DNA from: Auanema rhodensis
Lineage: Eukaryota; Animalia; Nematoda
Direction: 5' to 3'
Assembly (NCBI GenBank): GCA_964057225.1
Contig: OZ059894.1
Location: 8,804,001-8,868,000 of the forward strand
Length of the DNA stretch: 64,000 nt
Positions 6,001 through 27,413 of this stretch are shown here, piece by piece. The position numbers and the translations under genes are program-made. Each line of letters opens with the position of its first letter. Positions within the stretch are counted from its first letter, which is position 1. The notes under the pieces are model-generated. The model saw only the letters and a list, made by a program, of their open reading frames with translations, was not told the DNA's origin and did not search any database.

Positions 6001-6217
6001 GAATTGGAAAGTGGCACTTCTTGCCTGAAGGCACGCTTCTTATGAAATTAAAAAAGAAAAATTCATGTCCCCAATTCTCATTTTTTCCTCATTGGACTCT
6101 ATAACCCAAAAATGAAAACTATAATAACTATACCGAATATATTAATATTTTTTCAATTTCAGACAACGAAGGCTCATTATTGTTTTGCGTCGAAAGCTGC
6201 AAGGATTACATTTATAG
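1..6217 (+). CDS. tag-278: 3' part of a long coiled-coil protein gene, tag-278/FAM184-like (5' end outside window)
   Basis: About nine short-intron exons from 2 to 1683 encode E/K/Q/L-rich heptads ending ...RRISNMSAITNFSTADFSEIEDVEILRREIDK. The phase-2 donor at 1684 joins in frame to tttcag|6163-6217, giving QRRLIIVLRRKLQGLHL*. This C-terminus matches my recollection of C. elegans TAG-278 (…EIDRQKRLIIVLRRKLQ); the symbol is from memory and not search-verified. Confidence 0.7.
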
Positions 6218-9200
6218 GTTAACTATACCAAATATGCCGGCTGTCATGTATTCATTGTTCAACAACTTGTTCTAATTGGCCTTAACTATGTAGCTTTTTT
6301 ATTGGGTAGTTTCTATTGAATTCCCGTTGTTCATGTATAGAAACTCATCTGCTTGCCATTAGTCTTATAATTTATAATCATATGTTAACTATATCATATA
6401 GTGATAACTCAGTTCAATTGTCAACCCTGTTTTCATTCAAAAGCTCATAGAATTTATATTTTTTCTCAGATCTAAGATCAATTTTATATTTATTAATATA
6501 TATATATAGAAAAAAGAGATTATCATATAGCCAATTTTACTATTATTATCATTTATAATTATGAAAAAAAAACTTAAATTGAAATTGAAATAAAAGATTT
6601 TTCACTGATTCCCTCTATCAATTTCTATTTTAAATATTTTCAGTTGTTATCTCTTCTCATACAATGCTAAGTAGAGAATATATTCAGACTCAATCGAATT
6701 TCATTCCTGATTAACGATCAACATAGCACACTTGCTTTTCAAAATCATTTTTATCACAATCGGTAACTTGGAATTTCAACCATCCGGTCAACTGTCGATC
6801 TAACTTTCTCAGATTAGATGTCTGTCTGTTTGCTGTAGGTATTGACTTCGCGCCCTATGGGAACGGGTAAAGACAAGCAAAGGCATACTGTATATTACAA
6901 TTTTAACACAAAAAACGAATTGTTTCAACTAAAAAAATAAAATATTTTTGTATATTTTAATTATAAAATAAAAATATAAAAATCAATAAAATTAGTATAG
7001 GTTATTATAAATCTTCATTTATATTATATTGTTATGTAAATGAAGATCTTTAAAATGTTCATATTATGTAATCAAGTGTATTCATATCATCATTATTCAC
7101 AAATCATATATACCGTAATCATTGGAGATATAAACGAATTGTAAAACTATTCAAAGTTGTTTTCTTCATTCATTCATTCATCTACAATTTTCTTTTCAAA
7201 AAAACTATGACAATTTTTGAAATTTATATGTTTTCTGCAGTTTAAAAAGACATTGAAATACGTTTTCATTTCATTTTTATGAAAAGAAATGAGGAAGGAA
7301 GAGAAATATAAAGAAACACTTTCATCTTCCATTAATGATGATTATTTAGATCATCTGAATTGAAAGCAGGAAATAGTGAATGATCTTGATCAGTAGGTAG
7401 AAGCGTACTCGATTACTGCTCGCAATCAAGCGTTATTGCGCTTCTTCTGACAAGGCTGAGTCTGCCTCATATGTGAATTTGATAGAGTTTCATGTATTCC
7501 TGAAGCCTTAGGTCATCTTGTTTCTTTTTTTGTGTAGAAAGTCATCTGCCTGGATATGTTTACAATAGCAGGGTTGCGCATGCGTTATCCAAACTGAGAA
7601 AACCAATATTAGCTTTTGGGTTGTTGCGTTTGAACTTCTGTTGTCTTATTCGTTTCTATGCTGTCTGGCATGTTCAGACCATGGTTCAAGCGGCATGATT
7701 TGATTTTTTTGTTTTTTGGGCATCATTTTTTGATTTTTACTTTTGGGTCCCCCGATTGATGATCGATTGATTGGTCCCTTCACCACGAATCATATGATGA
7801 TGGTTGAGGTGGTGGCGTATGAGACAGACACACATACACACAGTGGATATGCTACGGGGCCTCGTTTCTCCTTCGTCGTCTATTTGCTCAACGTCAACGA
7901 CGACAATCCAGTCGAACCGGAGCGACTCACAGCCGATCGAGAGAATATGATAACGTTAGAGAGACGAGAGAAGACATATAACAAAAGAATTCTATTCTCC
8001 TTTGACTATCAGAGAGATGAAAGGTAAGCTGACGAAGAGAGAAGTAGAGTTAGCCTCACAGAGAACAGAGACATTCAAAATTGACAAGAGACGATTCATT
8101 ATACTGTGCTATTCGAAGAGATTTCACAGCAAGATGATAGAGAGAGCAATCAAGAAAGAATGACGATTCAAAAGAGGTGCAGAATGAGATGCAAGAGAAG
8201 GCGAGATAGAAAAGCTGACTGTAAGGCTAGGACAACCACTATGATCGACGGCGGCTGCGACCGGCTGGTGCTGTTGCTGAAAAGAAAGAGCCAAGTCACG
8301 GGACGGCACGTACCGTAATCCGTGGCTGGACTCCGATCAGAACAGTCTCACTCATTCTATCTATTTCTCTCTCTCTCTTTCCCTCTCTATCTTCCTCTCT
8401 TTCAGAATTCTCGACATCTTCTGTTTCTTCTGTCTGGCTCTCGTTCCTTTTCAACTTTATAGTCCTTCTTCTCCCGTTTTTTCGTCATCTGACAGGGAAT
8501 GATGTGGCTCACGTAAACGCCGAAGCGCTTTGACTTCTCATCCAACTCTCAGAACGCTTTTGTTATTGCTGACAACATGAATAAACTTCGGCGAAGAGTA
8601 GGATGAAGTTCAGCGATAGAAAAGAGTTGAGAATGGCTGGAGAAGTAGAATTGTTTTGTAGAAGACATGGGGAAAACAGAAAAAAATACTGCTGCCACTG
8701 TTGATCCCCTTCCTCCTTCATCACATACGCCGAAATTTCCATTTTAACAATCTTTCAAATGGATTAGAGTATGGCAGCACAAGAGCTTAAGCTCGTTCAA
8801 TAAGAATATTGTGAACGAGGCAGACGATTATGCAATATGAAGAACAGCCAACGGCTGTATCAGAAGATATCTTGAGGGCAAAGACAGCATCAAGTGCCAG
8901 GCAATTGCTACCAAAATTGGCATGTGATTCACAGATGTATTGCTTTCTGCATACTGCTCTGATTGTTATGTTGGATGATGGAACAGTCGGCCGGCTGATC
9001 TCCATCATCAACATGCTTAGCTAATATGGAAACATTACACAAGTTTTAACATCAATTAAGCACAAGCAGATGATACTTATATTGAACAACATAATATTGG
9101 GCGGTAGAGACAAGCAAAGCATAAGCTAGAAGCTAAGAAGAATATGAATTCAATAAGTGAAATGACATAGTGACATAACACAAATTTTTAGAAAACAGAA

Positions 9201-11925
9201 GAGAATAGTACTAGAAAATTATAAAATGCTTATGATAAAAGCTGGCAAAAATATAGATTTGTTGTGTGTTTCTTAGATGTATGTATGTATGTATGCCTTA
9301 GTGTGGACACGAGACCTTCAATATTTACCAGCCTCTAAGAATAAGGTACACACATGTATCACATAGATAATGATCCGTCAAATTTTAAATATCATGCATT
9401 TAAAATATTTTTGAATCATTCAAACCTTTTCTACTAGTTTTTAAAACATATTTCTGAGCTTTAAAAATTGTGGATTGTCATGTTACCCCCCCCCCCTCAC
9501 CCTTTTTCAGAATAAAAGCAACTTTATCTGGATCCCGAAAATAGGTACGAAATATGGATATCTTAACGCCAAACCAGGTAATTCAAGTCCTTTAGTGAGG
9601 ACCAGATGTCTAATTCTCTTTTTCATCTATTGCTCTCCTCATTGCTATTTCCCCTTCTCTTCTTCAATTCTTTATTACTCTCTCCTTCCATTTCTGAACA
9701 ACTCAGCTTACTGGAAACAAAGTGGAAGAGAGAGAGAGAAAGAGGTATTGAGTATCTGACGAAGACATGAAGACAGAAAAAGAGAGAAAGAGGAAGAGAG
9801 GGAGAGAGAGGGGAGAGAGAGAGGGAGTTGGGAAAGAGCACCTCTACCTCTTACCCACCATGTGTACTAGCTCTTCGAACTATGAAATAAAAATGAAATT
9901 TGATATATATAATTAATTAAGTACAACAAGTCCAGTTTTTGTTTCAGTCACTTCATCTGTTTTCATGTTTGGACTCTATTTTCCATTTATTATTTGGAAA
10001 ATTGTCATACGTGGCTTTACCTTGTCTGTAATAACAACTGATGAGAATATCATGTAGGGAATACACCTTCAGTACCTGGACATGTGACCTATATGAGCTT
10101 CGTATGATAGAAAATAGACCCAAATTCATAAGTTTCATCATTCTAAATGAACTTATAAGGACAGTGGCCTTCTCAATTTCGTCGTTTGCCCCCTTTAAAT
10201 TCGGCTCTTGTCTCGTTCTTTTTGCTTTGTCCTTTTAGCAAAAACTTGCGATGATTGTCCGTCTCTTTTCTCTCTCTCTTTTATTCTTCCTTTCTCTTGA
10301 TCTTCTATACTATTTTCGGGTTTTTCCTTTTTTCTCTTCTTTTCACTTACTGTCATACCTCCTGGATCGCGAAGAGAGGCTTCTCATTGATCGTGATAAA
10401 GAGGAGAGACAGAACGTTGTCTCTTCCTGAGCTGAAACGACAATCATGATCTCCCTCCCAAGTCGAGAGAAAATTGAAAAATCATTGAGGACTGAGAGGC
10501 TTAGAATGAGGTGAACCAAACGACGAAGACTGTCTTTGTACGATGATGAGAGCGAAGAGCCTTCGCCAAGTGACATGACGACGACGACGACATAGACGTC
10601 TGTCGTCGTCGACAATCTACTCTCCCTTCTTCTTTCCATCTTGCTGCGTCTCCACGAGCGGAAAACGAATAAGTGAGACTAGTCAGTGATGACTAAGCTG
10701 AAGCTCATCTCCTGAGCACAGTGCTAAGCGATATGCTGCATCACTTCAGCCTATGAGTTAGTCACATGTCTGCTTTCGTTATAGCTCTTAGATATTTCAT
10801 TATACGGACTGAGGATGAAAGTTGGATGGGTCGATATTATCGATGAGATGTCACCTTGCCATAAATGGCTTTGGGCAGTTGAGCAAACATTCATCAGCGT
10901 ATAGATGGGGAGGTCGAAGTCAGGTGATGGGAAGGATTGGTCACAGAAACGGTTGACCTTAGTTCAGCTTATCCGCTTCTTTCAAAGTGCGTTCCGCTGA
11001 AAGCTTTCTCTTTCAATCCTAATCACGTCTTGTCTTCCATCCACTCCCTCAATACTTCATATCCCTTTGCAGGACATATATTCTCGTTTATGCAGTAAAG
11101 TACGAAGTAGAATATCAGCCAGTTGTCTCATGGACGGAAAGCCATTGTCTTGTTGCCCGGATGGATCAGTCCAAACAGTTATAGAATCTCGGCCACAATG
11201 ACCTATTCTTATACGGTCATCAGCGAACTTCGCTGTTGCTCCTTCCACTCAATATGTTCCTTATATGGTCATAATAGTCTTTGTAAGAAGGTCTAGTAGT
11301 CGAATTGACAAGACACTATAGATTTAAAGAACACGTGTATTATATAGATGATCTGTGTCTGTGTGTCTGGGGCCATCGGATATGGACAATGAAAATAGCA
11401 CTTCCGACAGAAAAGGATGCACTCAATAGAACTCAGAAGAGGATTGAAAAGAGTAAGAAAGATTGAGAGGGAGAGAAATAGAGAGGAAAAACAAAATAAC
11501 TATAGAATGAGAGAGCATAGAGAAGCGTAAAATAGAAGACAGTAAAGTGACCAATGTTGATGATGAGGACAGATATCGTCCACTCGGCAGTTGCCGTATA
11601 AGGACTTCAACTTAAAGAATCTGAAGGTTGGAGTAATAGGTTGTTGGTTGTTACTCATCATGTTTCAAACCACTGACAACAGTTGGCGATAGTTGCCAAT
11701 TATGTGAACAATATCAGATGCTGCTAAACGCGGAGCTTGTTAAACATCAAAGTTCTAAGAGACTTTCAAGATTTTATCGGATCGCAACAAAGCTTCTTGC
11801 ATGAAACTTGATTTCTTTGAACTTGAACTAGCAAAAGCTTTCCGTTTGTGCTCTTGTACCGAAAGAACAATATTCTGTAGTATGTATATGGTGATGTGGA
11901 AGAGAAAATAAATAATATTTCAAGT

Positions 11926-11931
11926 TTTATT
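11926..11931 (-). terminator. Probable polyadenylation signal of pha-4 copy A
   Basis: AATAAA on the minus strand, within a ~80 bp block homologous to 17713-17796 at the end of copy B. Confidence 0.6.
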
Positions 11932-12065
11932 GCACATAATACATTCTTTTGTATCTCTAATATGGAAAAAATAAATATTCATAAATGTTTTCAATTTCTA
12001 ACCGCAGAATGAAAACAAACGGGAAACAAGCTTGAGATGAAACATTGATGGACACTACGGTTATC

Positions 12066-12656
12066 CCTGAAGAATCACAACCTAAGAAGACTTGTGTGTA
12101 CACGAGATAAAAGTTGTTTTTTGTAGTTTTTTTGAAAAAAAATTGAAGAAAATTCAACGATGAATGAATGAGAATCACAATAAGAATCAACAATAAAAGG
12201 AAGAAAATGAAGATTATTATGAAAATTTCTATATTAGGCATAAGGAGACATGAAGACAGATGGGAGGAATCACCACGAAAAACCGTAAACAGAGCGAATC
12301 GGATGATGATAAGTACGGAGATGATGGAGAAATGACAGTTGTAAAGACAGACTTTAGATGGTTACACGATCTATGCTCTTGCTTCTCGGCTTATAATCCA
12401 CTTCATAAGGCACTGATCATGTGAAAAGGCTTTAAGCTTCATAATCAAGCTCTAACTTCACTACTGAGTAAAGTGATTATAAACTGAAGAAAGACAAGAA
12501 ATAGAACATAGATCGGCAACTAAGGCATCATGTGAACCAGTGAGAAGTATATATATTGATTGATTGTTTGTTTGTTTATTTATTTGTTCGATTGTTTATC
12601 AATCAAATCAACAGCTGATCGAGTGTCTCAGCTTATTTGTCTATGTACAGATAGGC
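12066..12656 (-). repeat. 591 bp 3'UTR tract of pha-4 copy A, identical to 18143-18733
   Basis: Constant offset of 6077 at both ends, no differences seen by eye, and identical spurious ORF translations in the ORF track. Confidence 0.93.
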
Positions 12657-12672
12657 AGACCAGTATTCATGC

Positions 12673-14980
12673 TTATAAATTGGATGCCGTACTTGGATTT
12701 GTGGCACTGAAAATAAGATAAATAAGAAAATTCCAGAATTTCAAATAAAGGCATGAATAAAGTTGAAAAGAACTAAAAAAAAGTTTTACCTATATAACGT
12801 GTTGGAATAAGGTGTATAGTCAGCACCCATTGAGGTTGAATACGCACTAGGATACATTGATGAGTAATCAAAGCCAGCCTATAAAAATTGAATTACAAAC
12901 TTGAATGAAGAATCCCTTATTTTTTATTTTATTTTCACAGTTAGATATCCTGTATCCTCATCATGCTTCTGGCTATGTTTATCCACCTGGATATCCAGGA
13001 GCATCTGCCGTACACATGAACATACAGATATTGTTGAAAAAACTGCCAGTCACTTGTCAAAAGTATTCAACAAGGAACTAGTAGTTTGAGAGAATATTTG
13101 GGAAAAAAAGTAAAATTTTAAGGATGAGGATGATGATAATGATGATGATGATAGCTAACAAACCTTATTATCCATGATGGTGTTGATGCTGAATGCTGAT
13201 TGCGTCAAGCTAGGTAAGGCTGTTGAGTTGTTGAAGTCTTGGGAATACAGCATGCTGTTGTAATTGTAGGAGCCAAGCTGCAACAACAAAAATAATAAGT
13301 TCAAGTCCATAGGTTTTTGAACATTTAATTTCAATTTTTGATTTTTAATAGTATAGTTTATAGCATAGAGAAAGAAAAGAACTTCTGACTCTAAGTCCAG
13401 TCAATCAATTCTACTAGAACAGGCCTTGTTTGGTTTGCCGTTGTTCCTTTCGATGTCTACCGTACACACACGCACACACACACATACACATACAGCCATA
13501 CAGCCATACACACAAGTCAATTAGGTGTCAGGTATTACGCAATTTTATACGGTTTTAGATAGGTTATACAAACGTAAAAACGCGTTTTCTCTCAGTAATC
13601 ATCTGCACGTTGTGACTCCTTCTAACTCTCTTAGTACAGTATATTGCTTCTTAGCATTACTTACCGTTGGATCACTCATTCCAGCTGTTGAAATGACGGA
13701 ATTAGCTTGGGAAAGGGTGACTGAAGATTGGGAAATGGGCTGCATATGATCAGATCCTACGAGAGACACGTTTTCCTGAAGAAAAGTTGAATGATTAGAC
13801 ACATAAACTGATCGAATATATACCTGAAGTGCTAATGGGTTGTACTCGTCAGAAATTTTGTCTGATTCGAGTTTCATGGAATAAATTTTCTCAGATTTCT
13901 GACTTCCAATAGACGGTATACTAGTAACGCTTGGAGTGGTGCTAACTAAAGACTGATCGCTTAAGCTCTGCTCCGATGGAGCTCCTGAGTTGGAATCTGT
14001 TGAGGATTGGCCGGATGACTGATTGGCTGATTGCTGATTCTGTTGGTTCTGTCCAGATTGGTTTTTCTGAAAATACACATCATTCGTAACAATACTGATC
14101 CAATTTTCATGAGAATCTATTCGCATAAGAGGAAATTGAAATGAATAACGAACCTTTTTTCTGCTTGGCTCTCGTTCCCTAACCTTGAACCTCTTCTGAC
14201 GACGTAAGTGGCAGCCGTTTTCAAACATATTTCCGCATTGGGGATGTAAAGTCCAGAATGATCCTTTTCCTGGCTTATCAGGAGTTCTAGAAATGAAGTA
14301 AATGATGATATGTTCTTGAATAAAGAAAAGTTTTACCTTGGAACTTTGATGAAACAATCATTGAAGGACAATGAATGTCTGATAGAGTTCTGCCAGCGTT
14401 GTTGATTGGTCTCATAGTAAGGGAAACGCTTCATAATGAATTGATAGATTTCATTTAAAGTGAGCATCTTATTATCAGACATCTGGATAGCTCTAGTGAT
14501 GAGTGAGATGTAAGAATAGGGAGGCTTGCTCTTTCCATACCCTCCTTCGCGTTCAATTTTTTTCTGAAAAAAGGTGGAAATGAGAAATGACTTGTTACTT
14601 GTATTATCTTACAAATTCTTCATCGGTAAGATGAACTTCTTCCTGTGGGCCGAGATAGTCTCTGACCCCACGTGACACAGACACGGTTGGTACTGGCAAG
14701 GAGGAGGACCGTAAGGCTGCAAATCAATAGTTAAGCTTCATATATGATTGAAGGGAATGATAATGTTTGTAAAGAATAGAGAAAACTTACGATTATGTCC
14801 AGATGAAGATCCAATGTTATATCCAGTATATATAGAACTATTCATCTGAGCTGGTGTTGAGTTATACTGATATCCATATCCCAAAGGATTTAATGTATTA
14901 GTTGGATAGGTATAGCTTGGATATGTAACTCCATTTGTGGTATACGAAGGTAACACGGATAAGTAGTCTTGGGTAGACAT
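12673..14980 (-). CDS. pha-4: FoxA/PHA-4 forkhead transcription factor, divergent tandem paralog (copy A), ~414 aa, intact
   Basis: Exons 14980-14791, 14716-14613, 14563-14337, 14286-14154, 14066-13824, 13775-13665, 13277-13164, 12878-12790 and 12706-12673 splice in frame via GT-AG introns. Protein: MSTQDY...[15 protein letters not shown]...[17 protein letters not shown]...[38 protein letters not shown]...[15 protein letters not shown]. Confidence 0.93.
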
Positions 14981-16798
14981 ACTGAAATGAAAAAATGAGA
15001 TTAAATGATGTTGGATAAGAAAATGAGAATAACAGAAGAATGAAAACACAACGAAAAATCGATTTGATGCTGAATATACGAAAAACAGTACTTCAAAGCA
15101 AGACATCGTCCAAGTAGAAAAGAATATTTTGTTGGTAACAGTCAGAGAAAAGCTGCATTCTGGAGTTATTGGCGCAGAAGACGAGACAGAAAAGAAAATG
15201 AATTTGAAAATAGAGGAAAGTAAAGGTGAAGAAGAATTGCGACTGTAGCTGTGCTAGAGATGGGGAAACGAATACTAGAAGACCTTGTTGATTCTCATTG
15301 TAATCGTTGACGTATGTGAATTGACGACGTCGAAACAATCGTCTGGCACGCTGATCGAGTTTCGTTCGTTCATCTGTTGCTCTTTTCATCGTCTATACTG
15401 GACGAGTGTAGAAGAAGCCGAAAGCTGAGTGTGTTACCTGCTCTGACTGAGAAACGAAAGAAGAAAAAGAGAGAGCTAGCTGTGTTGAATGGTTTGCAGG
15501 AGAAGTAGAGAAGAACAGGAAAACGGTTGAGAGCAAGAGAAATGACTGAATGATGCAGGGAAAAATTCGGAAAAGAAGGAAAAGAAAGAAGAGAAATAGA
15601 TGAGACGAATGAAAGGGAGACAAACAGACATCGTAGACTACAAGAAATCTGAAGGCACAAAAGGCCTGAGCAATACACTGCCGACGTTTCTACAAGGCTA
15701 CACACATCACATCACATCACAGTACATCTTGAGAAAATGAAGATAAAAGTTTAGAAAAAGCTTATATATATGAATGAGAACAATAAAGTTCTGATGAAGA
15801 ATGAGTAGGTTTTTGCAAACCGAGGAAGGGAATCAACAAGGAAGGAAACAAGCTGATTGTGGTTGTACGGTTTATATACTTGCTAAGCAAGGTTCGATAA
15901 CGAAACCCATAGAAAAATCTTTGATAAAAAAACTTTTAGCCTCATATCAGGAAGCAATTATGGTACTGGAAACGTTATACAGCAAGAGAAGCAGATGTAA
16001 GTTCATAGTAATTCAGATGATAGTTGAATATATGCTAGAAATATTTCAAAAAAGCTTTCAATTTGCAATGGTTTACACTCAACAAAGATGGTTTTGTCAA
16101 GAAAAAAGAGAGAAAAAACGAGAGAGAATGAAGTAGAAAAACGGAAAGCAAAGAACTAATGATGTATAGTAAGCAACTTGAGCGTAGAATAATTGAAATC
16201 GCCGTGAAACTTTATGTAAAGTCTAGGTGTTAGAAATAGAAAAAAATTATTGAATTTAAGAAAAACAATGCAGAAAACAGAATTTCGGAACAGGAAGGAA
16301 TGAGAAGGAGGTAGTACCGTCGACACGTCATCGGATAGCAGGCTTTACTCTTTTAGATTGACAGAAAAGTTTGGAAAACTGCAAGTCAGAATCGGATGAC
16401 GACGCCTACGATGATAAGAGAACTGACGGAGGGGTCCTCGTGCTAAGACAAGTAGAGCTCAGCTCACCTCCATCTCTTTCCCGTTCTCGTTCTCCCACAA
16501 CCACCTAGTCGGTCGTCTTCTCCTCCTCCTCCTCCTCCTCCACACCCATCTCCTCGGCTAAGCTCCTCCCTCCTACAGTAACCGTCGCGGGCTGAGGCTG
16601 GTCGCTGGCCCGTCTATAGCCCCACCCCAGTGCACAGCAAGATTTTCTATGCTATATATAAGACCACGCCTCAAAATCGCAAAAAAAACGAGAAAAAATG
16701 AGTGAGAAATGAACTGCATGCCATTAGAATCTTAATTTCACATGGCTGGTCAGCTGGACAGATAAAAACGGGGGAAGTCCTGGAATCGATATGCCCGC

Positions 16799-16889
16799 TT
16801 CAGGAAGGCTAACGATGCAAATATTTGACCAAACAAACACGGAGGCATGAACACAAATATTGCTCGTCTTGCGTTTACTTTTCCGAATT
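16799..16889. promoter_or_regulatory. 91 bp element upstream of pha-4 copy A with three PHA-4 consensus (TRTTKRY) sites
   Basis: Identical to 21767-21857 while the flanks are unalignable. Contains gcaaata, acaaaca and acaaata (TATTTGC, TGTTTGT and TATTTGT on the minus strand). Confidence 0.7.
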
Positions 16890-17713
16890 TTGCACTTCCT
16901 AATTTGGAAGAAGAGATGGCATTTCCTTTAGACACGAGTAGAAGCATATGAAAGATAATAGAAAACACATACAAAATAGTCATGACAAATGAGGAAAAGG
17001 AAGAAAAGGAAGAAAAAGAAGAAAAAGAAGTGTTATCATACATGATTACAAAACATTCATAAAAGAAATGATAAAATAATTATTAAAAGGAAGAGTTAGG
17101 TAAAGAAATAGTTAGTGACAAGGAACTGAACTTTATCATTTAATGCGATAAAATAATTGATTTCACAAAAAAACATTCAACGGTTCGTAAACAGATGTGG
17201 AAAATTTAAAATATGGACGAAAACATATTGAGAACAGCTTAATTTCATCAGAAATAAATCAAGAAATTGAAAATAGCCTCATATTTTCTCTTCCTCTCTC
17301 TGTAGTGTGCTTCTAACGTCATGAATGCTCGTCCAATATTGCTAAAGAAACCTCCCTTCTTTCTCTCCCTCCCTCTCTCTCTCTCGTTCTTTACGCTGAG
17401 CCGTGAAGCTCCGCCTTATTCTACAATGACGTCAGCCTCCATTTGTCGTCTGTGTCGCAAAATCCTACAACGTTATACGTGGTGCCCGTCAAGTGAGCAG
17501 AAGCTTAAGTTTCGCGTTTGACTCAGGTTCCTGAACCACTTCAATACCTGATAGATTAAAGCCATCAATCTGATTGAAAAGCGAGTTGTCCTTTCAGTAC
17601 ATTTTTGTGTTTTTGTATTTTCCTTGTAGCTAACAGGCTTTGTACATTGCATAGAGTGTTGTTTCTGATATTTTTGTGATTTACGAAGAAAAATAAAATA
17701 AAATATTAAATCT

Positions 17714-17719
17714 TTTATT
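17714..17719 (-). terminator. Probable polyadenylation signal of pha-4 copy B
   Basis: AATAAA on the minus strand in the same context (plus strand ttttattgcacataa) as in copy A. Confidence 0.6.
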
Positions 17720-18142
17720 GCACATAACGTGTTCTTTAATATCTCTAGCATTGAAAAATTAATAAATATGCATATCTGGGAATATTTTCAACCGCACAAA
17801 CAAAAATAATTTGGGTGATGATAGATGAAAATTAGAAAAAAAAGAAACAAAGAAGGATGAAAAATACAAAATATTATTTCAATATTATAGGAAGTGAAAG
17901 AAAATTTGAGAGTTCAACAGATAAAGATGGATGTGATTTGTCCAAAATGTATTATCAGATTTCATGTAAAACTGAATGATCAAGAGATGCGGATGAAGTT
18001 AAGACAACAAGGTTGCAGCTTCTTTCCTATATATCTAAACATTGTTTTATAGAATAGACCTATGACCAGGAGAAAGATGATAGTTATGCTGAAGAAATAG
18101 GAGGGAAGGACGGCTGAAGAACAATCTGATTTGTGCGATTTT

Positions 18143-18733
18143 CCTGAAGAATCACAACCTAAGAAGACTTGTGTGTACACGAGATAAAAGTTGTTTTTTG
18201 TAGTTTTTTTGAAAAAAAATTGAAGAAAATTCAACGATGAATGAATGAGAATCACAATAAGAATCAACAATAAAAGGAAGAAAATGAAGATTATTATGAA
18301 AATTTCTATATTAGGCATAAGGAGACATGAAGACAGATGGGAGGAATCACCACGAAAAACCGTAAACAGAGCGAATCGGATGATGATAAGTACGGAGATG
18401 ATGGAGAAATGACAGTTGTAAAGACAGACTTTAGATGGTTACACGATCTATGCTCTTGCTTCTCGGCTTATAATCCACTTCATAAGGCACTGATCATGTG
18501 AAAAGGCTTTAAGCTTCATAATCAAGCTCTAACTTCACTACTGAGTAAAGTGATTATAAACTGAAGAAAGACAAGAAATAGAACATAGATCGGCAACTAA
18601 GGCATCATGTGAACCAGTGAGAAGTATATATATTGATTGATTGTTTGTTTGTTTATTTATTTGTTCGATTGTTTATCAATCAAATCAACAGCTGATCGAG
18701 TGTCTCAGCTTATTTGTCTATGTACAGATAGGC
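18143..18733 (-). repeat. 591 bp 3'UTR tract of pha-4 copy B, identical to 12066-12656
   Basis: Direct repeat, as described for 12066-12656. Confidence 0.93.
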
Positions 18734-18807
18734 TGCCTATGTGAACATCAGTCTCACTCTCAGTAGGTTGAGGAAAGTTCGTTGACGTAGAGTTGATTTC
18801 CATTTAT

Positions 18808-21800
18808 TCACAGGTTTGAAGCCGTACTTGGATTGCTGGCACTGAAACAAATCAAATAAATTTGAATTAAATAAGAAAGTTCATGAATAATATTTGTTTT
18901 AATATTGTAAAATCATAAGTTATAAGTATGTAAAAGCTAATTTACTGATATTCTTATATAAAATTTAAAAATCATTTTCGAATACTAACCTATATAATGT
19001 ATTTGGATAAGTCGTATAATCTCCTACAGCCGATTGATACATATTCGGATAAACACCAGGATAATCAAAATTCTGAAAACAAAAAAATGAAATGAGTTAA
19101 GTTGGTGGAAATAAGCTTAAGCTTATGCTTATAAGTATGCTCTTAAAAATTACCTTAGCATCAACAAGTGTGTTAATGGAAAAAGCTGACTGTGCCAATC
19201 CAGGTAATGTATTGGCTGCCGAAAAATCTTGTGTATACAGCATATTGTTGTATTGATAAGGATTAAGCTGAAACATTGATATATAAGTAAGTTGTTGATG
19301 CTGATGCTTAAAATAGGTTAGAAACTTAAAAACTTACCGGTGTATTGCTTATACCCACTGATGATATGACTGAGGTGGCCTGAGATAAGGAGGTGGTTGG
19401 AGATGAAAGTGATATAGGTTGAAGCTGTTGATTCTGCCCATCGTCTTTCTGAAAAATTTTGAAATATATCTATTCTAGGCTGCGAAAATACTAACCGTTC
19501 GACTCTGTTGAGTTGGCTGGCCTGTTGGTGTCGTTGATTGTTGTTGCTGTACATGAACTTGAGAATCGAGATCACCCTGACTACCAGGCACTTCTTCAAT
19601 CTTTGGTTCAAGCTTCACTTTTCCATATTCATCATCATTTGCACCATTCTCAATATTGAGCTGTTGCGTTTGTGACTGAATTTGGCTATTCTTCTGAAAA
19701 TAGAGAATGAATGAGAAAACTAGGAGACGTTGAATAGAGGTGAAGAGATTCAGATGAAGTGCTACTTTGAGATTTTTTTGTATAGATGATGCAAAACGAT
19801 ACGACAAATTTAAAAGAGGTTGTTGTAATGACCATTCCGACTGGCACTACTCTGACAAACGTTTTGAGGGCATGATGCTACGTTAAAAATTCTGAGACTT
19901 GCTGGCCTCTTGTAACCAAGACATATGTAGATATTATAGGGGGTAAAGGAAAAGTTGTTCAAACAATGACCAACCTTCTTTCTGCTTGGCTCTCGTTCCC
20001 TAACCTTGAACCTCTTCTGACGACGTAAGTAGCAGCCATTCTCAAACATATTTCCACACTTAGGATGTAAAGTCCAGAATGATCCTTTTCCTGGCTTATC
20101 AGGAGTTCTAGAAATGAGGTAAATGAGCTTAGTTCAAGTGAATGTCAGGCTTTTACCTTGGAACTTTCAAGAAGCAATCGTTGAAGGACAATGAATGTCT
20201 GATAGAATTCTGCCAGCGTTGTTGATTGGTCTCATAGTAAGGGAATAGATTCATAATCCAAGTATAAATTTCAGATAGAGTCAATTGCTTATTTTCAGAA
20301 TGTTGAATAGCCATAGTTATCAAGCTGATATACGAATAAGGAGGCTTTTGGTTACCGTAGCCATGACGTCGGAACTTGTTCTAAAAGAAAATCACATTAA
20401 TACTTGTTCTTCTTCGATTTGAAAGTCGTCATGAAATAGATTAATCGAATGGTTGTTTCATATTAAATGGAATGAATAACGATACCAATGAATTACTATC
20501 ATAATAAGTTTTTAACACATACAACCATCAGATTTAGTAAAAGAAAGACTTACATATTCAGCTGTAGTCAAGTGAACTTCTCCATTCTGTGATGGATATG
20601 AGTTACTTCGTGAGGACGATGGTGAAGCTGTTAATGTAGCTGATGCGCTATTAGGAGTGCCATTAGAATTTGCTGTTGATCGTGGAGCTGAATTTACAAC
20701 TATAAGAAAAAACAAACAAAAATCAATAAAAACGAAGTAACAAACATTAAAAAAAACAGTTTTTATTAGGTAAATAACTTACTTATTGGTGAGATGCCAG
20801 TAGTTTGCATGTTAAAGCCACCATATGAGCTATTCATCTGAGCTGGTGTTGAGTTATACTGATATCCATATCCCAAAGGATTTAATGTATTAGTTGGATA
20901 GGTATAGCTTGGATATGTAACTCCATTTGTGGTATACGAAGGTAATATTGATGAGTAGTCCTGTGTTGACATTCCCTGAAACGAACATCAGTACTTTGCA
21001 AACGAAATGTTTGGAAATGTTTGATTAAGGAATGAAGCAATAAAAAGACAAAATTTTCACACAAATTCATTTGCAATTTGAGAAATAAAAAGTTTTTTAA
21101 TGGACTTGTTGAAGAAAATTTAGATTATAAAGCATAAAAAAATGTTTTTTTTTCATGTTGTTATTGTCGATTCAAAGATTCAACAAATCAACGAAAAAAT
21201 AAATAGAAAAATGGATGTTGAAGCCCATCATAGGACATTGGCAATATCTAACTAAAAAGAAATATTTAAAAGAAATAAATAGAAAATGAAACGTTAATAG
21301 TCAGAATACTTATTGATTCTTTTTGATACTTTTAACTTCATTCAACACTCATATAAGCTGCTGATTTTGGATATTCGATTGTGGTTCACTACTGCTCAAG
21401 TGGTTGGCAGAATTACAATCTATCGAATGAGGAAAGAGGAACGAGATGGAAGAGAGACGAGGCGGGTCCCGGTGCCGAGTCCTCTCGGTCCCACCCTCAG
21501 CCCCCCCCTCTCTCTCTCCCCCTAGCCTCGGCGGCAGGCTCCACCCCCTACCGTAACCGGGCGAGTATGGCTGGCTGGCCTTGAGACGTGTGAGAGACGT
21601 TAGCTTGGGTGTAATAGAGTTATGAAAAATGTTTTTTTTTAAATTTAAATTTGGATTAAGAATAAGAGAATAATAGAGAAATATGTAAAGAAGAAATGAA
21701 ATGGATATGGAGAAGATGATGAGATCTGCCGGGGTGGTCTCGAATAAGGCGTCGATCGAAATGCGTTTCAGGAAGGCTAACGATGCAAATATTTGACCAA

Positions 21801-24654
21801 ACAAACACGGAGGCATGAACACAAATATTGCTCGTCTTGCGTTTACTTTTCCGAATTATGTACTCTGTTCTTCCTAATTAGGTAATCTTCAAAAAGATAA
21901 TGATTGTTTGATAAGTATGTGTAGTTGATATGACGGTAAATCCATAAATGCAGCTACTTTTCGCGGAAAAAAAGTAAATGAAAGAGGAGAAAATGATTGA
22001 AGAAGGATATCCCAAAAGAAGAAATAATTTCTTTTCGATGTTCTATGTAAACAAAGTAGGTGAAAAAATAAATATTTTCTTTATATTTCTGCCAGAAAGA
22101 AAAAAAACTTAAAAGAAAACAAATTAGATAAAAGATATTATTATTAAAATAATAATATTAAAATTAAAAGAAATTCATAAAAGAAAAAAACGAAAAAGAA
22201 TCATTTGAAAGGTTTCAAGCAAAACCTAAAAACATTTTGTACAGAATGAAGGAAACGAAATGGAAAGACATAAACGATAGAAGAGCTCGTGTTTTTGTAT
22301 TCGTTATGGAGAAGAATATAGAGAACACAGGTGCAGAAAAGGAAAAATCGAAGGAACAAGCTTGGCTAGGCAGGAGGACCTATGCTTATATGTTATAGAC
22401 GACAACGACGAGTAGTAATCGTGCGATAAGACGCTGAGAATTGAGTCTCAGGTCTCTCATTGTCTCTATTACATATCGTTTTTTATTTTTTTTTGATTTT
22501 CTCTCTCCATTTCTCTCTCTCTCTTTTTGGTAGTTGTAATGATGCTGCACAACGGATAGGACAATCATAATGTTGTGGAGAATTTAGCTATCAAAACCTT
22601 CATATTTTCAAACTTTGCATTGAACCTATCAGTATCGTCATTGTATTCTTAATATCTGAACATCTTCTTTGGCGGCAGATCAAAGAATTAAGAATCATTT
22701 GAAGAAACGATGGAAGTAAACGACAAGTAGCTGTGAACAACTTCAGGTTTATATATAGAACGTTGTTGATTCGGTGAATCAAGATGCCTTTAAAGCCTAG
22801 GTCAAAAAGGACTGATCTTGGAGTGGGTGATAGGATAGATGAGTGGGTCGGTATAGAGAAGACGATAATATAGAAATCGTATATGGTAGTTGGAAAAAAA
22901 TACAAATGGGCCATGTATATTGAAGTACAAACACTTTGTCTGCCGATGTACAATGGCATTACACTAGATGAGAGAAGTCAAGAGATTCAGAAGCTCAACC
23001 AGAAGAGGAAAACTACAATGCACACCTAGTCCTGACTACTTTTTGTCGCTTACGTGTGCTTCTACTGGTCGACTAAGAAAAACAGATGATTAATCAGGAA
23101 AATAAGAAAAACTGTAATATTATCGTAAACAAGATTTTTTCTTGGTTTATACTGACGATAGAGAAGATTTTTTCTATTCTTGTCAAAAACTTTGTATAAA
23201 AAAATGGAAAAAGCTGTGAATGAATAGAATATCAATTAATATAAAAAAAAAGTTAAATAAAACTAATTATTATTAATAATAATAATATTATTATTATAAT
23301 TTTAATTATAATAGTTGGCTAATAAGAGGACAAATTCAAAAAAAAAGACAAAGAAAAACATTGAACCACTGATATTGCTGGGAGGTACAGTGAACGTCTG
23401 TATGTATGTTGTATATGTTCGATAGATAGAAAGGACGAAAAACCTCACTAGCTTGAATGAAAACATATTTTTCTCTGCGTTGCTCAATGGTCTCAAAGCA
23501 GCATCTGTTCAACCTGATTCTTATCAGTGATGGTCATAATTTCAAATCTGAGTGAAATTGAAATAAACTACCGGCACATGAAGTGACCAAAACAGGCCGA
23601 AGATTACGAAGACACAGAAAATAGACTACATGACTTTTTGAAATGTCAAATGTTTGAAACAGTAACTCTTGATGAGACTTATTCAAAACTAATCTGATGA
23701 TTTATAGATCTGTATTATGAAGTATTTTGAGATTATTCCGACAATAGATATCTTTTCGTATTCTAAAAACTCTCGTTTTCGTTTCCGGGACCACAAAAGC
23801 TCAAAATATTTCTTAGTACTTTCGTTTTGCTATTCATTTCTTTCTCTCTTGATATCATGAAAAGCCTGCAGGCCCTGCTTGCTATGCACCAAATAAAAAG
23901 AAATGAATATGAGAAGACCAAATCGATTCGGTTGCTTCGTTGGTTTCATCTGGAGGGGACCCTGAAAAGCCGTCCTGTTTCCCAGATTCAAAGCTTGAGC
24001 TGGGTAGGCCAATCTGAGGTTTCATTCGTTTAAGACCATCAAGCAAGCTAGAAGGACTAGAAAGGAAAGAGATACGATGAAATAAACAGAGAAGTGATGC
24101 TATAGATGGAAGAAAAAGTAAAGCAAAACAACAAAAAAAGTATTGTTAAAAGAAAAAAATTGAAGAATCATCTAATTTAGAAAGAAAAGCATTGAGATTT
24201 GATAAAATTAACGCTAAAATGAAAATGTAAAAGGTATATGAGGAAGTAAATATAAAAAAACATGCAGAGTTCTAATCTTAGATTAGAGAAATGGCCCTGA
24301 TATCAAGCGGTCAAACAGTTTTTCGACCCATAGATAGTCTATTATTCTCCTTTCCACATTCATCTCTATGTAATCTTATCATACATGACATAGCCTCAAT
24401 ATGATGTTTCATTATCACTCATGCAATAAAGAAAAACTTTAGATAGTCCTAGCAGATTATAAAAGAATGAGACAATTTTTGAACTTTTTCTATATTTTCT
24501 ATCTATTTTGAGGGTTTTTTTGATAAATAAATTTAAAAATAACAATAAATATAATATAAAGTTTTGATGAACAAACCTGTATAATGGTATTTTGATAGAG
24601 TGACGTTGCATCGGCCACCGAAGTGGTTGGTGTGAGGCTGCTGTTCTGATTCAT
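18808..24654 (-). CDS. pha-4: FoxA/PHA-4 forkhead transcription factor, canonical copy (copy B), ~433 aa
   Basis: Exons 24654-24577 (MNQNSS...TIIQ, phase-0 join inferred), 20975-20783, 20687-20554, 20380-20157, 20107-19975, 19693-19496, 19448-19338, 19267-19154, 19072-18990 and 18841-18808. The forkhead domain [62 protein letters not shown] and the C-terminus [15 protein letters not shown] are PHA-4 signatures. A shorter isoform could start at ATG 20972. Confidence 0.95.
21767..21857. promoter_or_regulatory. 91 bp element in intron 1 (or internal promoter) of pha-4 copy B
   Basis: Identical to 16799-16889. Confidence 0.7.
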
Positions 24655-27413
24655 ATCCAATCCAACAACCTGTAATGACCTCAATTATTGAAAAAAAAAT
24701 AAGAAGAAGAAAAGACATGAGAATATACCATAAGAATACAAAAATAAAAAAAAACGAATAAAAAACTGAAAAAAAGCATTTATCATGAGCATTTATCCTT
24801 TATATTCTGATGATATGATCAGAGTACAGATGGCTTTCGAGCTGACATGAGACCTGACTGTGTAGATATTATTACAAGAAAAGCTGCATTTTTCGAAAAA
24901 GAAGGAGATTTTTCTGATAGCATCGGGTAAAAAATAGAATTCTCCACATTGAAAAAGCAGTAAACGGCAAAAAAAATTCAGTCTATCAACTGGAAACGAC
25001 GGTGAGCAAAGGACTTTCAGATGAATCCGGAGAAAGGTGTTCTGTCAAAGCCTTGTACTTCTCTCTTTTTCCACTCTCTCTTTTTCTCATCTGCTCTAGA
25101 TGTTGAATTTCTCAACTCCCTCTCTCGTTTTTATAAGTCTTTTCACTCCAACTGATCGTCGACGCTACAGCTCAGGTCGTCGACGACGACGACGACAACC
25201 ACAAGTAGGAGAAGGCGAAGGGCGACAGAAAGAGCAACAGGCGTGTCGAAGCCTATAGAACCGGCTGTTGACGTTGTGATGAAGAGACGAGAAAAGGCGA
25301 AATGGAAGACAAGGATAAAAGGCAATTGGGGTAATGAAATCAACTAAGAATTGAACCTCACAGAACCGAAAAGGAGAACGGGGTCTATGCCTATAATCAA
25401 AAATAGTTGGAAAACTCAAGTCCTAAGCATTTTCACAAACTTAAAAGCGGAAAATGAAAGCTGGTATGATTGAAATAACTTAGGAAATCTTAAGTTTAAC
25501 ATGATTATTTATGTAAAAAATGAAGACTAGGGTAATATTATTGCAAAAAAAAAAGAAATATATTGAAAAGAAGTCTTCGAAGGAAAGTTAGCGGGCGAAG
25601 AAAGAAAGCTTGACGCGCGCAGACCGGCCCTATGGAAAAACCGGAAGAGAGCAGGCTTGTCTGTGCCTTTGCTCCATTTTTCCATCTCCGCCTCGTACTT
25701 TCTTCTGAATGATTTGACGTGACTGTCTGTTACAAGGTGGTTGAAGTGAAAAAAAACGAGAAAGGGAGAGATAGAGGGAAAGACAGAGAGAGAGAGAGAA
25801 GGAGAGGAAGATAGAAAGAGAGAAGGAGGTGGTATGGATTGCAGTTGATTCTAACGTAAGGAAAATTAAAGAGGCTTCAGTACCTTCTTCAAAACCAATT
25901 GAAAGATCTCGGAATTGAAATGTTCAACAAGACAGATATCCGGTGGTGAGAGAATAAGACAATGAGCTCATGTCATCATTCTTTAGCTTTAGCATTCATA
26001 TAACTACTAACACTACCACCCTACAACAACGACAACGAAGCTGACGATGACACCGGGAAAACGACGTTGCCTACCAGGCTTGGCATCAGCTTCCTTCTCC
26101 TCGTATCAAGTTTCGTTCTTGTCTTGAAGCTTTAACTGACTATGGTTTGATGCAGAGGAGCCCAATTTCACGCAATAGGTAGATTACAAGCGACTGAAAT
26201 CTGAGTGAACGAGGAAAAACAACGAAAAAAGGAATGAAATCAACGAGTGATACGTGGCATATCGTCAATGCGGCATGATTCTGAAACTGATTGTTGACTT
26301 AACCAGCAAAAGGAATCCAGACAACTTTGCATAGTGGAGCATTCCCGTTGAAGTGAAGACATATATCAAGATGTAAGCGCAGTTACATGCTCATATACAG
26401 CGAATTCCCATACGAAATGCTGTCTTTGTGCTTCAGTTGAATTAAATCTTGGAAGAGAACTGGCGCCGGAAGCGGTAAAACGGAAAATATACTAATCAGC
26501 TGATATGAAAAGGTGTCAAAAAGAATTATTTGCAGCTTGTGGTCATCATCTTCAGACATGTTTAGATATCAAATATTTAACCGAGAGTTTGCTACAATGT
26601 AAATATGTACATGGGGGCAGGTACACGTGTGAATGCCGCTGGACACAAATATATGGATAATACTGAAAAAAGCTTCTTCGGTGGCATAAGCTACTGAAAC
26701 AACTTCTAACATGTATGTACGATATGATGTCAGAAATTGACTCAGTCAATAGAGTAATAGTCGATGGTTTTCACCACACAATCCATAAGTTCTGCTGGAC
26801 AGTGCTTTTGACTAATGTACGTTGTTCAAGAACATTTCCAGTTATGGTGCAGCTACGACATCTGTTTCAGGTTCAGCCGACGATGGCAAGAATGAGCAAA
26901 AATCAGAAGGAGTTTTCGGACGAAAAAAGAATCTAAGAGTGGATAACAAGTGCTGTGATCGTCTGAGTTGCAAAGAAGAATAAGAAATCATTAGTGAATG
27001 GTAAATTGCTCTAAAATTGATTTCAGCTAAATGGTTAATAAGTGAGGTGGATGTCGACACCAATGCTTGCTGTGCATTGCAAACAGTACGAGAAGCCGTG
27101 ATGAGGGGAAAGGAAACTAGGCTGAGAGAGAGAAGGAGAGGCATCATAGAGACGTGCTGTTAGAGAATAGATTTCAAGAGAACTGATTGCGATAAGTAGA
27201 GAAATGAGATACGGAGAGAAAAAGAGCAAGCTTCCGAAAGTCTGTGCGTTGGCAGTTTGGACCTTCGTCGCCTCATACATGAACCTATACGAGAGAAGGA
27301 TCAGAGAAAAGATGAAAATGAAGAGAGAAGCATTTTGCTGGAGTGTTTTGCTGATAGAATGTACAGGGAATATAAGAATTAGAAGAGTAGAAAGAGTGGA
27401 AAGCTAGCAAGCG

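What the first reader, a model, noticed from the sequence alone, without database searches (positions are those of the whole stretch)
11926..24654. Two intact tandem pha-4/FoxA genes
Seen: two complete genes about 6 kb apart with the same 8 intron positions and phases and no disabling mutation, but with unalignable introns and diverged linkers, so this is neither an assembly duplicate nor an allele. Established: pha-4 is the single-copy, dosage-sensitive pharynx selector gene in C. elegans. Inference: an old, retained duplication of an organ-identity gene that could underlie new pharynx, gut or stage-specific functions.
Basis: partly seen in the sequence, partly recalled or inferred. Interest (0 to 1): 0.88.

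Follow-up and report, generated by a model that had tools for sequence, protein, structure and literature searches.

The report
Two expressed tandem FoxA/pha-4 genes
This roundworm, a relative of Auanema melissensis, carries two intact, transcribed and selectively maintained copies of the foregut master-regulator gene pha-4/FoxA side by side; the duplication is old and real, but similar FoxA pairs sit unremarked in other nematode genomes, so it is a useful case rather than a unique one.

Summary
Two complete FoxA/pha-4 genes lie head-to-tail on the minus strand, about 6 kb apart. Copy B spans 24654-18808 (10 exons, 433 aa). Copy A spans 14980-12673 (9 exons, 414 aa). The eight shared introns have the same positions and phases.

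Spliced RNA contigs from four samples of one study match all nine predicted introns that were covered, five in A and four in B. Auanema melissensis (JU1783) has the same B-then-A pair on one scaffold. Trees give (A,A),(B,B) inside one exclusive clade. The duplication therefore arose in this lineage, before the two species split; silent sites between the species are saturated.

Both copies are under strong purifying selection (omega about 0.04 for A and 0.07 for B). A diverged faster at first, lacks B's first exon and most of B's conserved intron-1 elements, and has fixed changes at three near-invariant forkhead positions. Its DNA-reading helix is unchanged.

Gene conversion still homogenises the N-terminal exon, silent sites in the forkhead exons and a 591-bp 3'UTR block (100% identical).

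Tandem FoxA pairs also occur in Strongyloides ratti and Caenorhabditis sp. 36, and two FoxA genes share a contig in Steinernema hermaphroditum. pha-4 is not universally single-copy. What A does that B does not is untested.

First-stage notes of this scan (s1-401426, s1-401577, s1-401601) had already flagged parts of this stretch.

The parts
18808..24654 (-). Copy B coding region: the ancestral-type FoxA/pha-4 gene, 10 exons, 433 aa, including 5' exon 1 (24654-24577) and the 3601-bp intron 1
   Evidence: Gene model. It is 84% identical over 395 columns to A. melissensis P0065. Introns 19496/19448, 19338/19267, 19154/19072 and 18990/18841 are confirmed by spliced RNA contigs. The other introns are supported by the P0065 exon map.
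17712..18807 (-). Copy B 3'UTR, about 1.1 kb
   Evidence: RNA contigs cover 17712-18172 and 18143-18733. An AATAAA lies at 17719-17714.
12673..14980 (-). Copy A coding region: the derived FoxA/pha-4 paralog, 9 exons, 414 aa, starting at the MSTQDY exon
   Evidence: Gene model. It is 85% identical over 354 columns to A. melissensis P0001. Introns 14791/14716, 14613/14563, 14337/14286, 14154/14066 and 13824/13775 are confirmed by spliced RNA contigs. A TTTCAG acceptor lies 1 nt before the ATG.
11926..12672 (-). Copy A 3'UTR, about 0.75 kb
   Evidence: An RNA contig runs out of the shared block into A's own flank: the loose end matches 12036. The distal AATAAA is at 11931-11926.
12066..12656 (-). 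591-bp 3'UTR block in copy A, 100% identical to 18143-18733
   Evidence: blastn 591/591. It is a single 591-nt RNA contig in all four runs. Its depth roughly equals A plus B: 173 against 105-116 plus 80 in X1.
18143..18733 (-). The same 591-bp 3'UTR block in copy B
16796..16896 (-). Conserved non-coding element 1.8 kb upstream of copy A
   Evidence: It matches 21755-21864 in B's intron 1 (94.6% over 112 bp). It is also 90% identical to A. melissensis B intron 1, L001 2986-3080. It holds 3 TRTTKRY matches; only 1.6% of 101-bp windows reach 3. No RNA contig covers it.
21755..21864 (-). The same conserved element inside copy B's intron 1, about 0.8 kb upstream of exon 2
21388..25282 (-). Further blocks conserved between species around B exon 1 and in intron 1: 25282-25225, 23988-23888, 23148-23061, 22887-22781, 21503-21388
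   Evidence: blastn against L001 gives 77-90% identity although silent sites are saturated. None has a counterpart upstream of copy A.
12509..12536 (-). 28-nt 3'UTR motif in copy A, present in all four genes of both species; the copy B instance is at 18586-18613
   Evidence: 27/28 identical to both A. melissensis UTRs. Absent from the S. ratti and C. sp. 36 loci.

Best explanation
SHOWN. A head-to-tail tandem duplication of the FoxA/pha-4 gene arose in the Auanema lineage, before this species split from A. melissensis. Both products have been kept as working genes.
- Copy B keeps the ancestral layout: a 5' exon, a 3.6-kb intron 1 with several conserved non-coding blocks, and a canonical forkhead domain.
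- Copy A corresponds to the internal unit only, from one intron-1 element through to the 3'UTR. It has no upstream exon.
- Both are transcribed and correctly spliced, and both are under strong purifying selection.
- A diverged about three times faster than B just after the duplication. It fixed changes at three near-invariant forkhead positions (M14 to R/K, L36 to R, Y92 to H), but its recognition helix and wings are unchanged.
- Gene conversion keeps homogenising the N-terminal exon, silent sites of the forkhead exons and the 3'UTR.

INFERRED. A's message probably starts at a trans-splice acceptor 1 nt before the ATG. The two proteins probably bind the same TRTTKRY-type sites. They probably differ in where and when they are made, because A retains only one of B's conserved elements. 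They probably also differ in partner or activation surfaces (the changed forkhead positions and an unrelated Ser/Gln-rich linker). This would be a subfunctionalised pair sharing control through identical 3'UTRs.
For: Intact models with matching intron phases. Nine of nine covered introns confirmed in RNA contigs from four samples, with no sequence differences. Same B-then-A order in A. melissensis.

Trees: (A,A) 100/100, (B,B) 99/95, A+B 100/100; A stem 0.46 against B stem 0.14. The same topology holds on the C-terminal half alone, A+B 98.

Selection: dN is 0.094 for A and 0.103 for B, with dS of 1.6-2.1; omega is 0.044 and 0.065. Nonsynonymous against synonymous counts give p of 6e-96 for A and 2e-75 for B.

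Conversion (quartet-informative sites):
- N-terminal exon: 11 within-species, 2 orthology, 1 third pattern.
- Forkhead exons, third positions: 12 within-species against 2 third pattern (p 0.013).
- Exons 6-10: 85 orthology against 7 within-species.
- The 591-bp UTR block is 100% identical within the species but mostly unalignable between species.

Forkhead changes are at 0-1.5% frequency among 197 FoxA proteins, and the H3 helix and wing 2 are identical. A has a TTTCAG acceptor 1 nt before its ATG, and no contig joint leads upstream. tblastn finds exon 1 only at 24654.
Against: - No data on tissue, stage or sex expression. The RNA evidence is assembled contigs from one study, so levels and strand cannot be read.
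- A's last three introns and B's first five were not covered by RNA. They rest on the A. melissensis annotation and on canonical splice sites.
- A's upstream region in A. melissensis is an assembly gap, so conservation of A-specific regulatory DNA is unknown.
- Same DNA specificity is inferred from sequence identity only.
- Only two species of this lineage could be compared.
- The window's species was not identified.
Confidence: 0.8

Rival explanations
1. Redundant dosage pair. Both copies do the same job in the same cells and are kept for total FoxA dose, with gene conversion holding the key modules alike.
For: Both appear in all four RNA samples with a similar contig-depth ratio. The recognition helix is identical. 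The N-terminal exon and 3'UTR are homogenised. The shared upstream element carries FoxA-type sites.
Against: The two proteins differ strongly outside the homogenised parts (dN 0.52 after the forkhead domain). Those differences are themselves conserved between species (A ortholog dN 0.124 there). A carries lineage-fixed changes at near-invariant forkhead positions. A lacks exon 1 and all but one of B's conserved non-coding blocks.
Confidence: 0.12
2. Copy A has a new or opposing role, for example a competitor at FoxA sites or a factor specific to a stage, sex or dauer. It would not merely share out the ancestral role.
For: A's stem branch is three times longer and is followed by tight constraint. 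Changes at M14, L36 and Y92 recur at the same positions in other derived nematode FoxA paralogs: Caenorhabditis sp. 36 b has L36R, and Rhabditophanes b has M14T, L36Y and Y92H.
Against: No functional or expression data. The conserved C-terminal PHA-4 motifs are retained in A. The recurrence rests on very few lineages and may only mark positions that relax first.
Confidence: 0.06
3. Copy A is a decaying or untranscribed duplicate (pseudogene).
For: It lacks the 5' exon, and its forkhead domain has unusual substitutions.
Against: The 414-codon frame is open with canonical splice sites. It is spliced in RNA at all five covered introns. Omega is 0.044 over saturated silent divergence.
Confidence: 0.01
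4. Assembly artefact, or two alleles placed in tandem.
For: The 591-bp identical block could suggest a collapsed or copied sequence.
Against: The window has no N. The copies differ at a third of replacement sites, and blastn finds no intron similarity. Each has its own ortholog in another species in the same order. The RNA graph shows the 591-nt block as one contig branching into two different flanks at both ends, with roughly additive depth.
Confidence: 0.01

Closest known systems
C. elegans pha-4 (P0135, 'Defective pharyngeal development protein 4')
   Same: Same family. Both copies fall in the nematode PHA-4 clade. They share its forkhead recognition helix, its wing-2 motif and its C-terminal SVIS..G and TLYS..N.S.A.NL motifs.
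   Different: C. elegans has one gene (established knowledge). Here there are two in tandem. One lacks the 5' exon and carries changes at M14, L36 and Y92 of the forkhead domain.
Auanema melissensis JU1783 gene pair on CALQYR020007470.1 (P0065 and P0001)
   Same: Direct orthologs of B and A, in the same order and orientation. They also have a near-identical N-terminal exon and 3'UTR start between paralogs: 100% over 50 bp, 95% over 98 bp and 98% over 99 bp.
   Different: That draft is broken by N gaps exactly at the homogenised blocks. The A-type protein is therefore annotated truncated (355 aa, false start), and B has a spurious extra intron. The held papers do not mention the pair.
Tandem FoxA pairs in Strongyloides ratti (LN609529.1; P0125 and P0025) and Caenorhabditis sp. 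36 (P0128 and P0027)
   Same: Two forkhead genes lie head-to-tail, 5-6 kb apart. In C. sp. 36 the downstream copy is again the short, fast-evolving one (394 against 511 aa; branch 0.56 against 0.08).
   Different: These are independent duplications: each pair groups within its own lineage. In S. ratti the upstream copy is the more diverged one.
Vertebrate FoxA1/FoxA2/FoxA3
   Same: Retained FoxA paralogs with near-identical DNA-binding domains and diverged flanks.
   Different: From established knowledge, the vertebrate genes are dispersed paralogs rather than a tandem pair. They carry the Forkhead_N and HNF_C domains (PF08430, PF09354), which the nematode proteins lack in the precomputed Pfam lists. 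No ongoing gene conversion is involved.

Membership tests
FoxA / PHA-4 forkhead transcription factors | Forkhead (winged-helix) DNA-binding domain | tested here: met
   PF00250 on the first forkhead exon of each copy, E 5.5e-30 (A) and 8.3e-31 (B). The second exon completes the domain.
FoxA / PHA-4 forkhead transcription factors | Placement inside the nematode PHA-4/FoxA clade, with non-nematode FoxA as outgroup | tested here: met
   both copies sit within rhabditid PHA-4 sequences, and the nematode clade is supported at 100/96.
FoxA / PHA-4 forkhead transcription factors | FoxA-type recognition helix and basic wing 2 ([20 protein letters not shown]) | tested here: met
   Identical in A, B and C. 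elegans PHA-4.
FoxA / PHA-4 forkhead transcription factors | Conserved nematode PHA-4 C-terminal motifs | tested here: met
   The SVIS(S/T)(V/A)G motif and the terminal TLYSA(S/T)NPSTASNL are present in both copies and in other rhabditid PHA-4 proteins.
FoxA / PHA-4 forkhead transcription factors | Binds TRTTKRY sites and specifies foregut identity | not testable with these tools
   Needs binding assays and genetics.
Pseudogene (non-functional duplicate) | Disabling mutations, no transcription or neutral evolution | tested here: not met
   Open frame, spliced RNA and omega 0.044.
Concerted evolution by gene conversion between tandem paralogs | Paralogs within a species are more alike at silent or non-coding sites than orthologs between species, in discrete tracts | tested here: met
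   N-terminal exon: dS is 0.24 and 0.32 within species but saturated between species, with quartet sites 11 against 2. The 591-bp UTR block is 100% identical within the species and mostly unalignable between species. Exons 6-10 do not show this (85 against 7).

The most novel reading that the evidence does not exclude
Derived FoxA paralogs that arose independently in several nematode lineages have changed the same three otherwise near-invariant forkhead positions (M14, L36, Y92). This occurs in Auanema copy A, Caenorhabditis sp. 36 b and Rhabditophanes b. If real, it marks a repeatable route to a second kind of FoxA protein, with the same DNA reading but an altered partner or chromatin surface. 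In Auanema, selection would then keep the pair co-regulated by conversion-homogenised 3'UTRs and a shared FoxA-site enhancer.
Probability: 0.15. Interest if true: 0.7.

Novelty: new member of a known kind. Interest (0 to 1): 0.5.

Why it matters
pha-4/FoxA is the textbook organ-identity gene of the nematode foregut, and it is studied almost entirely as a single gene. This stretch offers a natural, long-lived two-gene version in a culturable genus. The division of labour between the copies can be tested directly. The pieces that conversion keeps identical (N-terminal exon, forkhead, 3'UTR, one enhancer) point to what must stay shared. The pieces that diverged (5' exon, intron-1 elements, linker, three forkhead positions) point to what can be split. 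The recurrence of FoxA pairs in other nematodes shows that the single-copy state is not a rule.

Tried and rejected
- YN00 and Nei-Gojobori dS for the A orthologs failed because silent sites are saturated (pS 0.77). I used ML and count tests instead.
- Global alignment identity of introns is inflated by gaps and was not used.
Only single miR-71-like and miR-124-like 7-mers appeared, and I do not interpret them.
- An Rfam scan of 11000-25500 gave only one sub-threshold SCARNA7 match (29 bits against a cut-off of 65).
- ORFs elsewhere in the window gave no useful Pfam hit.
- The look-up of Steinernema protein P0147 found no record, so its tandem arrangement rests on locus tags and a shared contig only.
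- The 'goes back 5540' joint is not a real transcript. B's exon 5 lies outside the laid stretch, and its last 34 nt fit A's exon 4 with one mismatch.
- Four literature searches found no paper describing pha-4 duplication in Auanema or other nematodes.
- The window's species could not be named. Its proteins are not in the searched collections, and the run names are coded.
- The window's own spliced proteins have no reference, so database searches used the A. melissensis orthologs P0001 and P0065 instead.
Full report
WHAT IS THERE

The window is AT-rich eukaryotic DNA (30-40% GC) with no N. Two forkhead-domain genes lie on the minus strand. The first forkhead exon of each hits Pfam PF00250 (E 5.5e-30 and 8.3e-31). 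The closest database proteins are two 'unnamed protein products' of Auanema sp. JU1783, namely P0001 (355 aa) and P0065 (433 aa), which lie on one 428-kb scaffold. JU1783 is Auanema melissensis (PMC9984802).

Using those two proteins as guides, I built splice-consistent models.
- Copy B has 10 exons from 24654 to 18808 and encodes 433 aa.
- Copy A has 9 exons from 14980 to 12673 and encodes 414 aa.
- All introns are GT..AG.
- The eight introns of A and the last eight of B sit at homologous positions with phases 1,0,2,0,0,0,0,2.
- B has one more intron (3601 bp) after a 26-codon 5' exon. That exon resembles the N-terminus of Heterorhabditis PHA-4, so it is probably ancestral.
- Equivalent points in the two copies are 5.8-6.1 kb apart.

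THE COPIES ARE NOT UNIFORMLY DIVERGED

blastn between the copies finds:
- a 591-bp block that is 100% identical (12066-12656 = 18143-18733), lying in the 3'UTRs 16 nt (A) and 74 nt (B) after the stop codons;
- the N-terminal exon at 94% identity;
- the forkhead exons at 84% identity;
- a 112-bp non-coding element at 94.6% identity (16785-16896 against 21755-21864).

Nothing else aligns, and that includes the introns. The 591-bp block has no third copy in the window.

BOTH COPIES ARE EXPRESSED

Four runs from one 2019 study hold 36-37% of the words of 12600-21000. I laid their contigs on 13700-19699 at 97% likeness or better. The results were:
- Contigs are spliced exactly at all five A introns in range: 14791/14716, 14613/14563, 14337/14286, 14154/14066 and 13824/13775.
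- Contigs are spliced exactly at all four B introns in range: 19496/19448, 19338/19267, 19154/19072 and 18990/18841.
- No base differs from the window, and nothing lies on the intergenic DNA.

The runs are recorded only as 'RNA?', but intron-less contigs show that they are RNA.

The 591-bp block forms its own 591-nt contig in every run. One end continues into B's distal UTR (to 17712). A loose end matches A's own flank at 12036. Its depth (173 in X1) is close to A (105-116) plus B (80). Both messages therefore carry the identical block, and the identity is not a polishing artefact.

The 'goes back 5540' joint is B's exon 5-6 junction falling on A's near-identical exon 4 end, because B's exon 5 lies outside the laid stretch.

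Limits of this evidence: contigs do not give level, strand or ends. A's last three introns and B's first five were not covered, and they rest on the A. melissensis exon maps.

A has no upstream exon. tblastn finds exon 1 only at 24654. No contig joint leads upstream from 14980. A canonical TTTCAG acceptor lies 1 nt before A's ATG. I infer trans-splicing there.

AGE AND ORIGIN

In A. melissensis the B-type gene (L001 732-5989) is followed by the A-type gene (10001-12070) on the same strand. This is the order seen in the window.

That draft has N gaps at 3904-4111, 6150-9905 and 12176-12704. The gaps begin or end where the paralogs are nearly identical: 100% over 50 bp and 95% over 98 bp in the N-terminal exon, and 98% over 99 bp in the 3'UTR. 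They explain why P0001 is annotated with a false start and why P0065 has an extra intron.

A 44-protein tree (IQ-TREE, LG+C20) gives (A,A) 100/100, (B,B) 99/95 and an exclusive A+B clade at 100/100. That clade sits among Diploscapter, Heterorhabditis plus strongylids, and Caenorhabditis. Conversion could in principle inflate the A+B grouping, so I repeated the tree on the region after the forkhead domain, which shows no conversion. The topology was the same, with A+B at 98.

No further A-type protein turned up in a collection of about 5.8 billion protein clusters.

The duplication therefore arose in the Auanema lineage, before this species and A. melissensis split. Silent sites between the two species are saturated (pS 0.66-0.77).

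SELECTION

Between orthologs, dN is 0.094 for A and 0.103 for B, against dS of about 2.1 and 1.6. ML omega is 0.044 for A and 0.065 for B. Count tests of nonsynonymous against synonymous change give p of 6e-96 for A and 2e-75 for B. After the forkhead domain A is, if anything, more constrained than B (dN 0.124 against 0.207).

A's stem branch is 0.46 and B's is 0.14. A evolved fast early and was then locked in.

FORKHEAD DOMAIN

A and B are identical in the recognition helix and both wings. In both species A carries M14 to R/K, L36 to R (with K35) and Y92 to H. In 197 other FoxA proteins these A residues occur at 0%, 1% and 1.5% respectively.

The same positions are altered in other derived nematode paralogs. 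Caenorhabditis sp. 36 b has L36R, and Rhabditophanes b has M14T, L36Y and Y92H. This is suggestive, but it rests on few lineages.

GENE CONVERSION

I classed the quartet-informative sites in the four-gene codon alignment.
- N-terminal exon: 11 group the paralogs within species, 2 group the orthologs and 1 shows the third pattern (p 0.006 against the third pattern).
- Forkhead exons, third positions: 12 within-species against 2 third pattern (p 0.013).
- Exons 6-10: 85 orthology against 7 within-species.

Within-species dS in the N-terminal exon is 0.24 and 0.32, while it is saturated between species. The 3'UTR block is identical within the species. It aligns to A. melissensis only at short motifs, including a 28-nt motif shared by all four genes. 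This is mosaic concerted evolution. It agrees with the first-stage note s1-401426.

REGULATORY DNA

B's exon 1 flank and intron 1 hold at least six blocks that are 77-90% identical to A. melissensis despite saturated silent sites. Only one of them, 21755-21864, has a counterpart upstream of A, at 16796-16896. Its core is invariant across A, B and the A. melissensis B gene. It holds three TRTTKRY matches, and only 1.6% of 101-bp windows in this window reach three. TRTTKRY as the PHA-4 site is taken from established knowledge, and I did not test binding. RNA contigs do not cover the element. A's upstream region in A. melissensis is an assembly gap, so A-specific conservation cannot be judged.

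HOW IT MOST LIKELY WORKS

Shown: an old tandem duplication in which both copies are intact, spliced and constrained, and in which conversion tracts are confined to particular modules.

Inferred:
- The duplicated unit ran from inside intron 1 to the 3'UTR, giving a compact downstream gene equivalent to the short internal transcription unit.
- The two proteins read the same DNA sites.
- They differ in regulatory input and in non-DNA surfaces and linker. This would make them a subfunctionalised pair under shared 3'UTR control.

Plain redundancy for dose and a new or antagonistic role for A remain possible. Pseudogene and assembly-artefact readings are excluded.

COMPARISON AND NOVELTY

Both genes meet every sequence criterion for nematode PHA-4/FoxA. 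The claim that pha-4 is single-copy holds for C. elegans but not for the phylum.
- Strongyloides ratti has two forkhead genes head-to-tail, 5.2 kb apart.
- Caenorhabditis sp. 36 has a long upstream copy and a short, fast-evolving downstream copy 5.8 kb apart.
- Parastrongyloides, Rhabditophanes and Steinernema hermaphroditum also have pairs.
- Each pair groups within its own lineage, so these are independent events.

Four literature searches found no paper describing any of these duplications.

I class this as a new, well-supported member of a known kind: retained tandem transcription-factor paralogs with concerted evolution. It is of moderate interest, mainly because it offers a tractable natural experiment on an organ-selector gene.

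Noticed in passing
window 13507-13580 (-), inside copy A intron 6 (13278-13664): A 74-bp block in A's largest intron is 85% identical to the same intron of the A. melissensis A gene (L001 11394-11464), while the rest of the intron is unalignable. A weak, sub-threshold Rfam SCARNA7 match overlaps it (13462-13607, 29 bits against a cut-off of 65). It could be an intronic small RNA or an enhancer.
   Followed up: partly
window 12509-12536 and 18586-18613 (-); L001 6113-6140 and 12139-12166: A 28-nt 3'UTR motif (TTCACATGATGCCTTAGTTGCCGATCTA, 27/28 conserved) is present in all four FoxA genes of the two species. It is absent from the S. ratti and Caenorhabditis sp. 36 loci. A UGUANAUA (PUF-like) motif also lies near the start of the shared UTR sequence in all four genes. 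No regulator was identified.
   Followed up: partly
L001 (A. melissensis CALQYR020007470.1) 3904-4111, 6150-9905, 12176-12704: Scaffold gaps sit where the two paralogs are nearly identical. As a result the public annotation truncates the A-type protein (false start at MPSSAG) and gives the B-type gene a spurious extra intron.
   Followed up: yes
L002 (Strongyloides ratti LN609529.1) 10001-11663 and 16892-18202; L003 (Caenorhabditis sp. 36) 10001-16301 and 22118-23511: Independent head-to-tail FoxA gene pairs in other nematodes. In C. sp. 36 the downstream copy is short and fast-evolving, as in this window.
   Followed up: partly
Forkhead positions 14, 36 and 92 (numbered from NQKPPYSY in copy B): Derived paralogs from independent duplications change the same near-invariant positions. 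Auanema A has R/K14, R36 and H92; C. sp. 36 b has R36; Rhabditophanes b has T14, Y36 and H92; C. remanei b has I36; Steinernema 5775 has F92.
   Followed up: partly
window 11150-11443: Two blocks downstream of copy A are 83-91% identical to L001 13385-13733. They are either the next conserved gene's exons or conserved non-coding DNA. I did not examine them.
   Followed up: no
window 53475-53873 (-): An ORF with a weak, sub-threshold Sulfotransfer_2 match (E 0.0064, 17 bits against a cut-off of 22). It may be an exon of a sulfotransferase gene.
   Followed up: no
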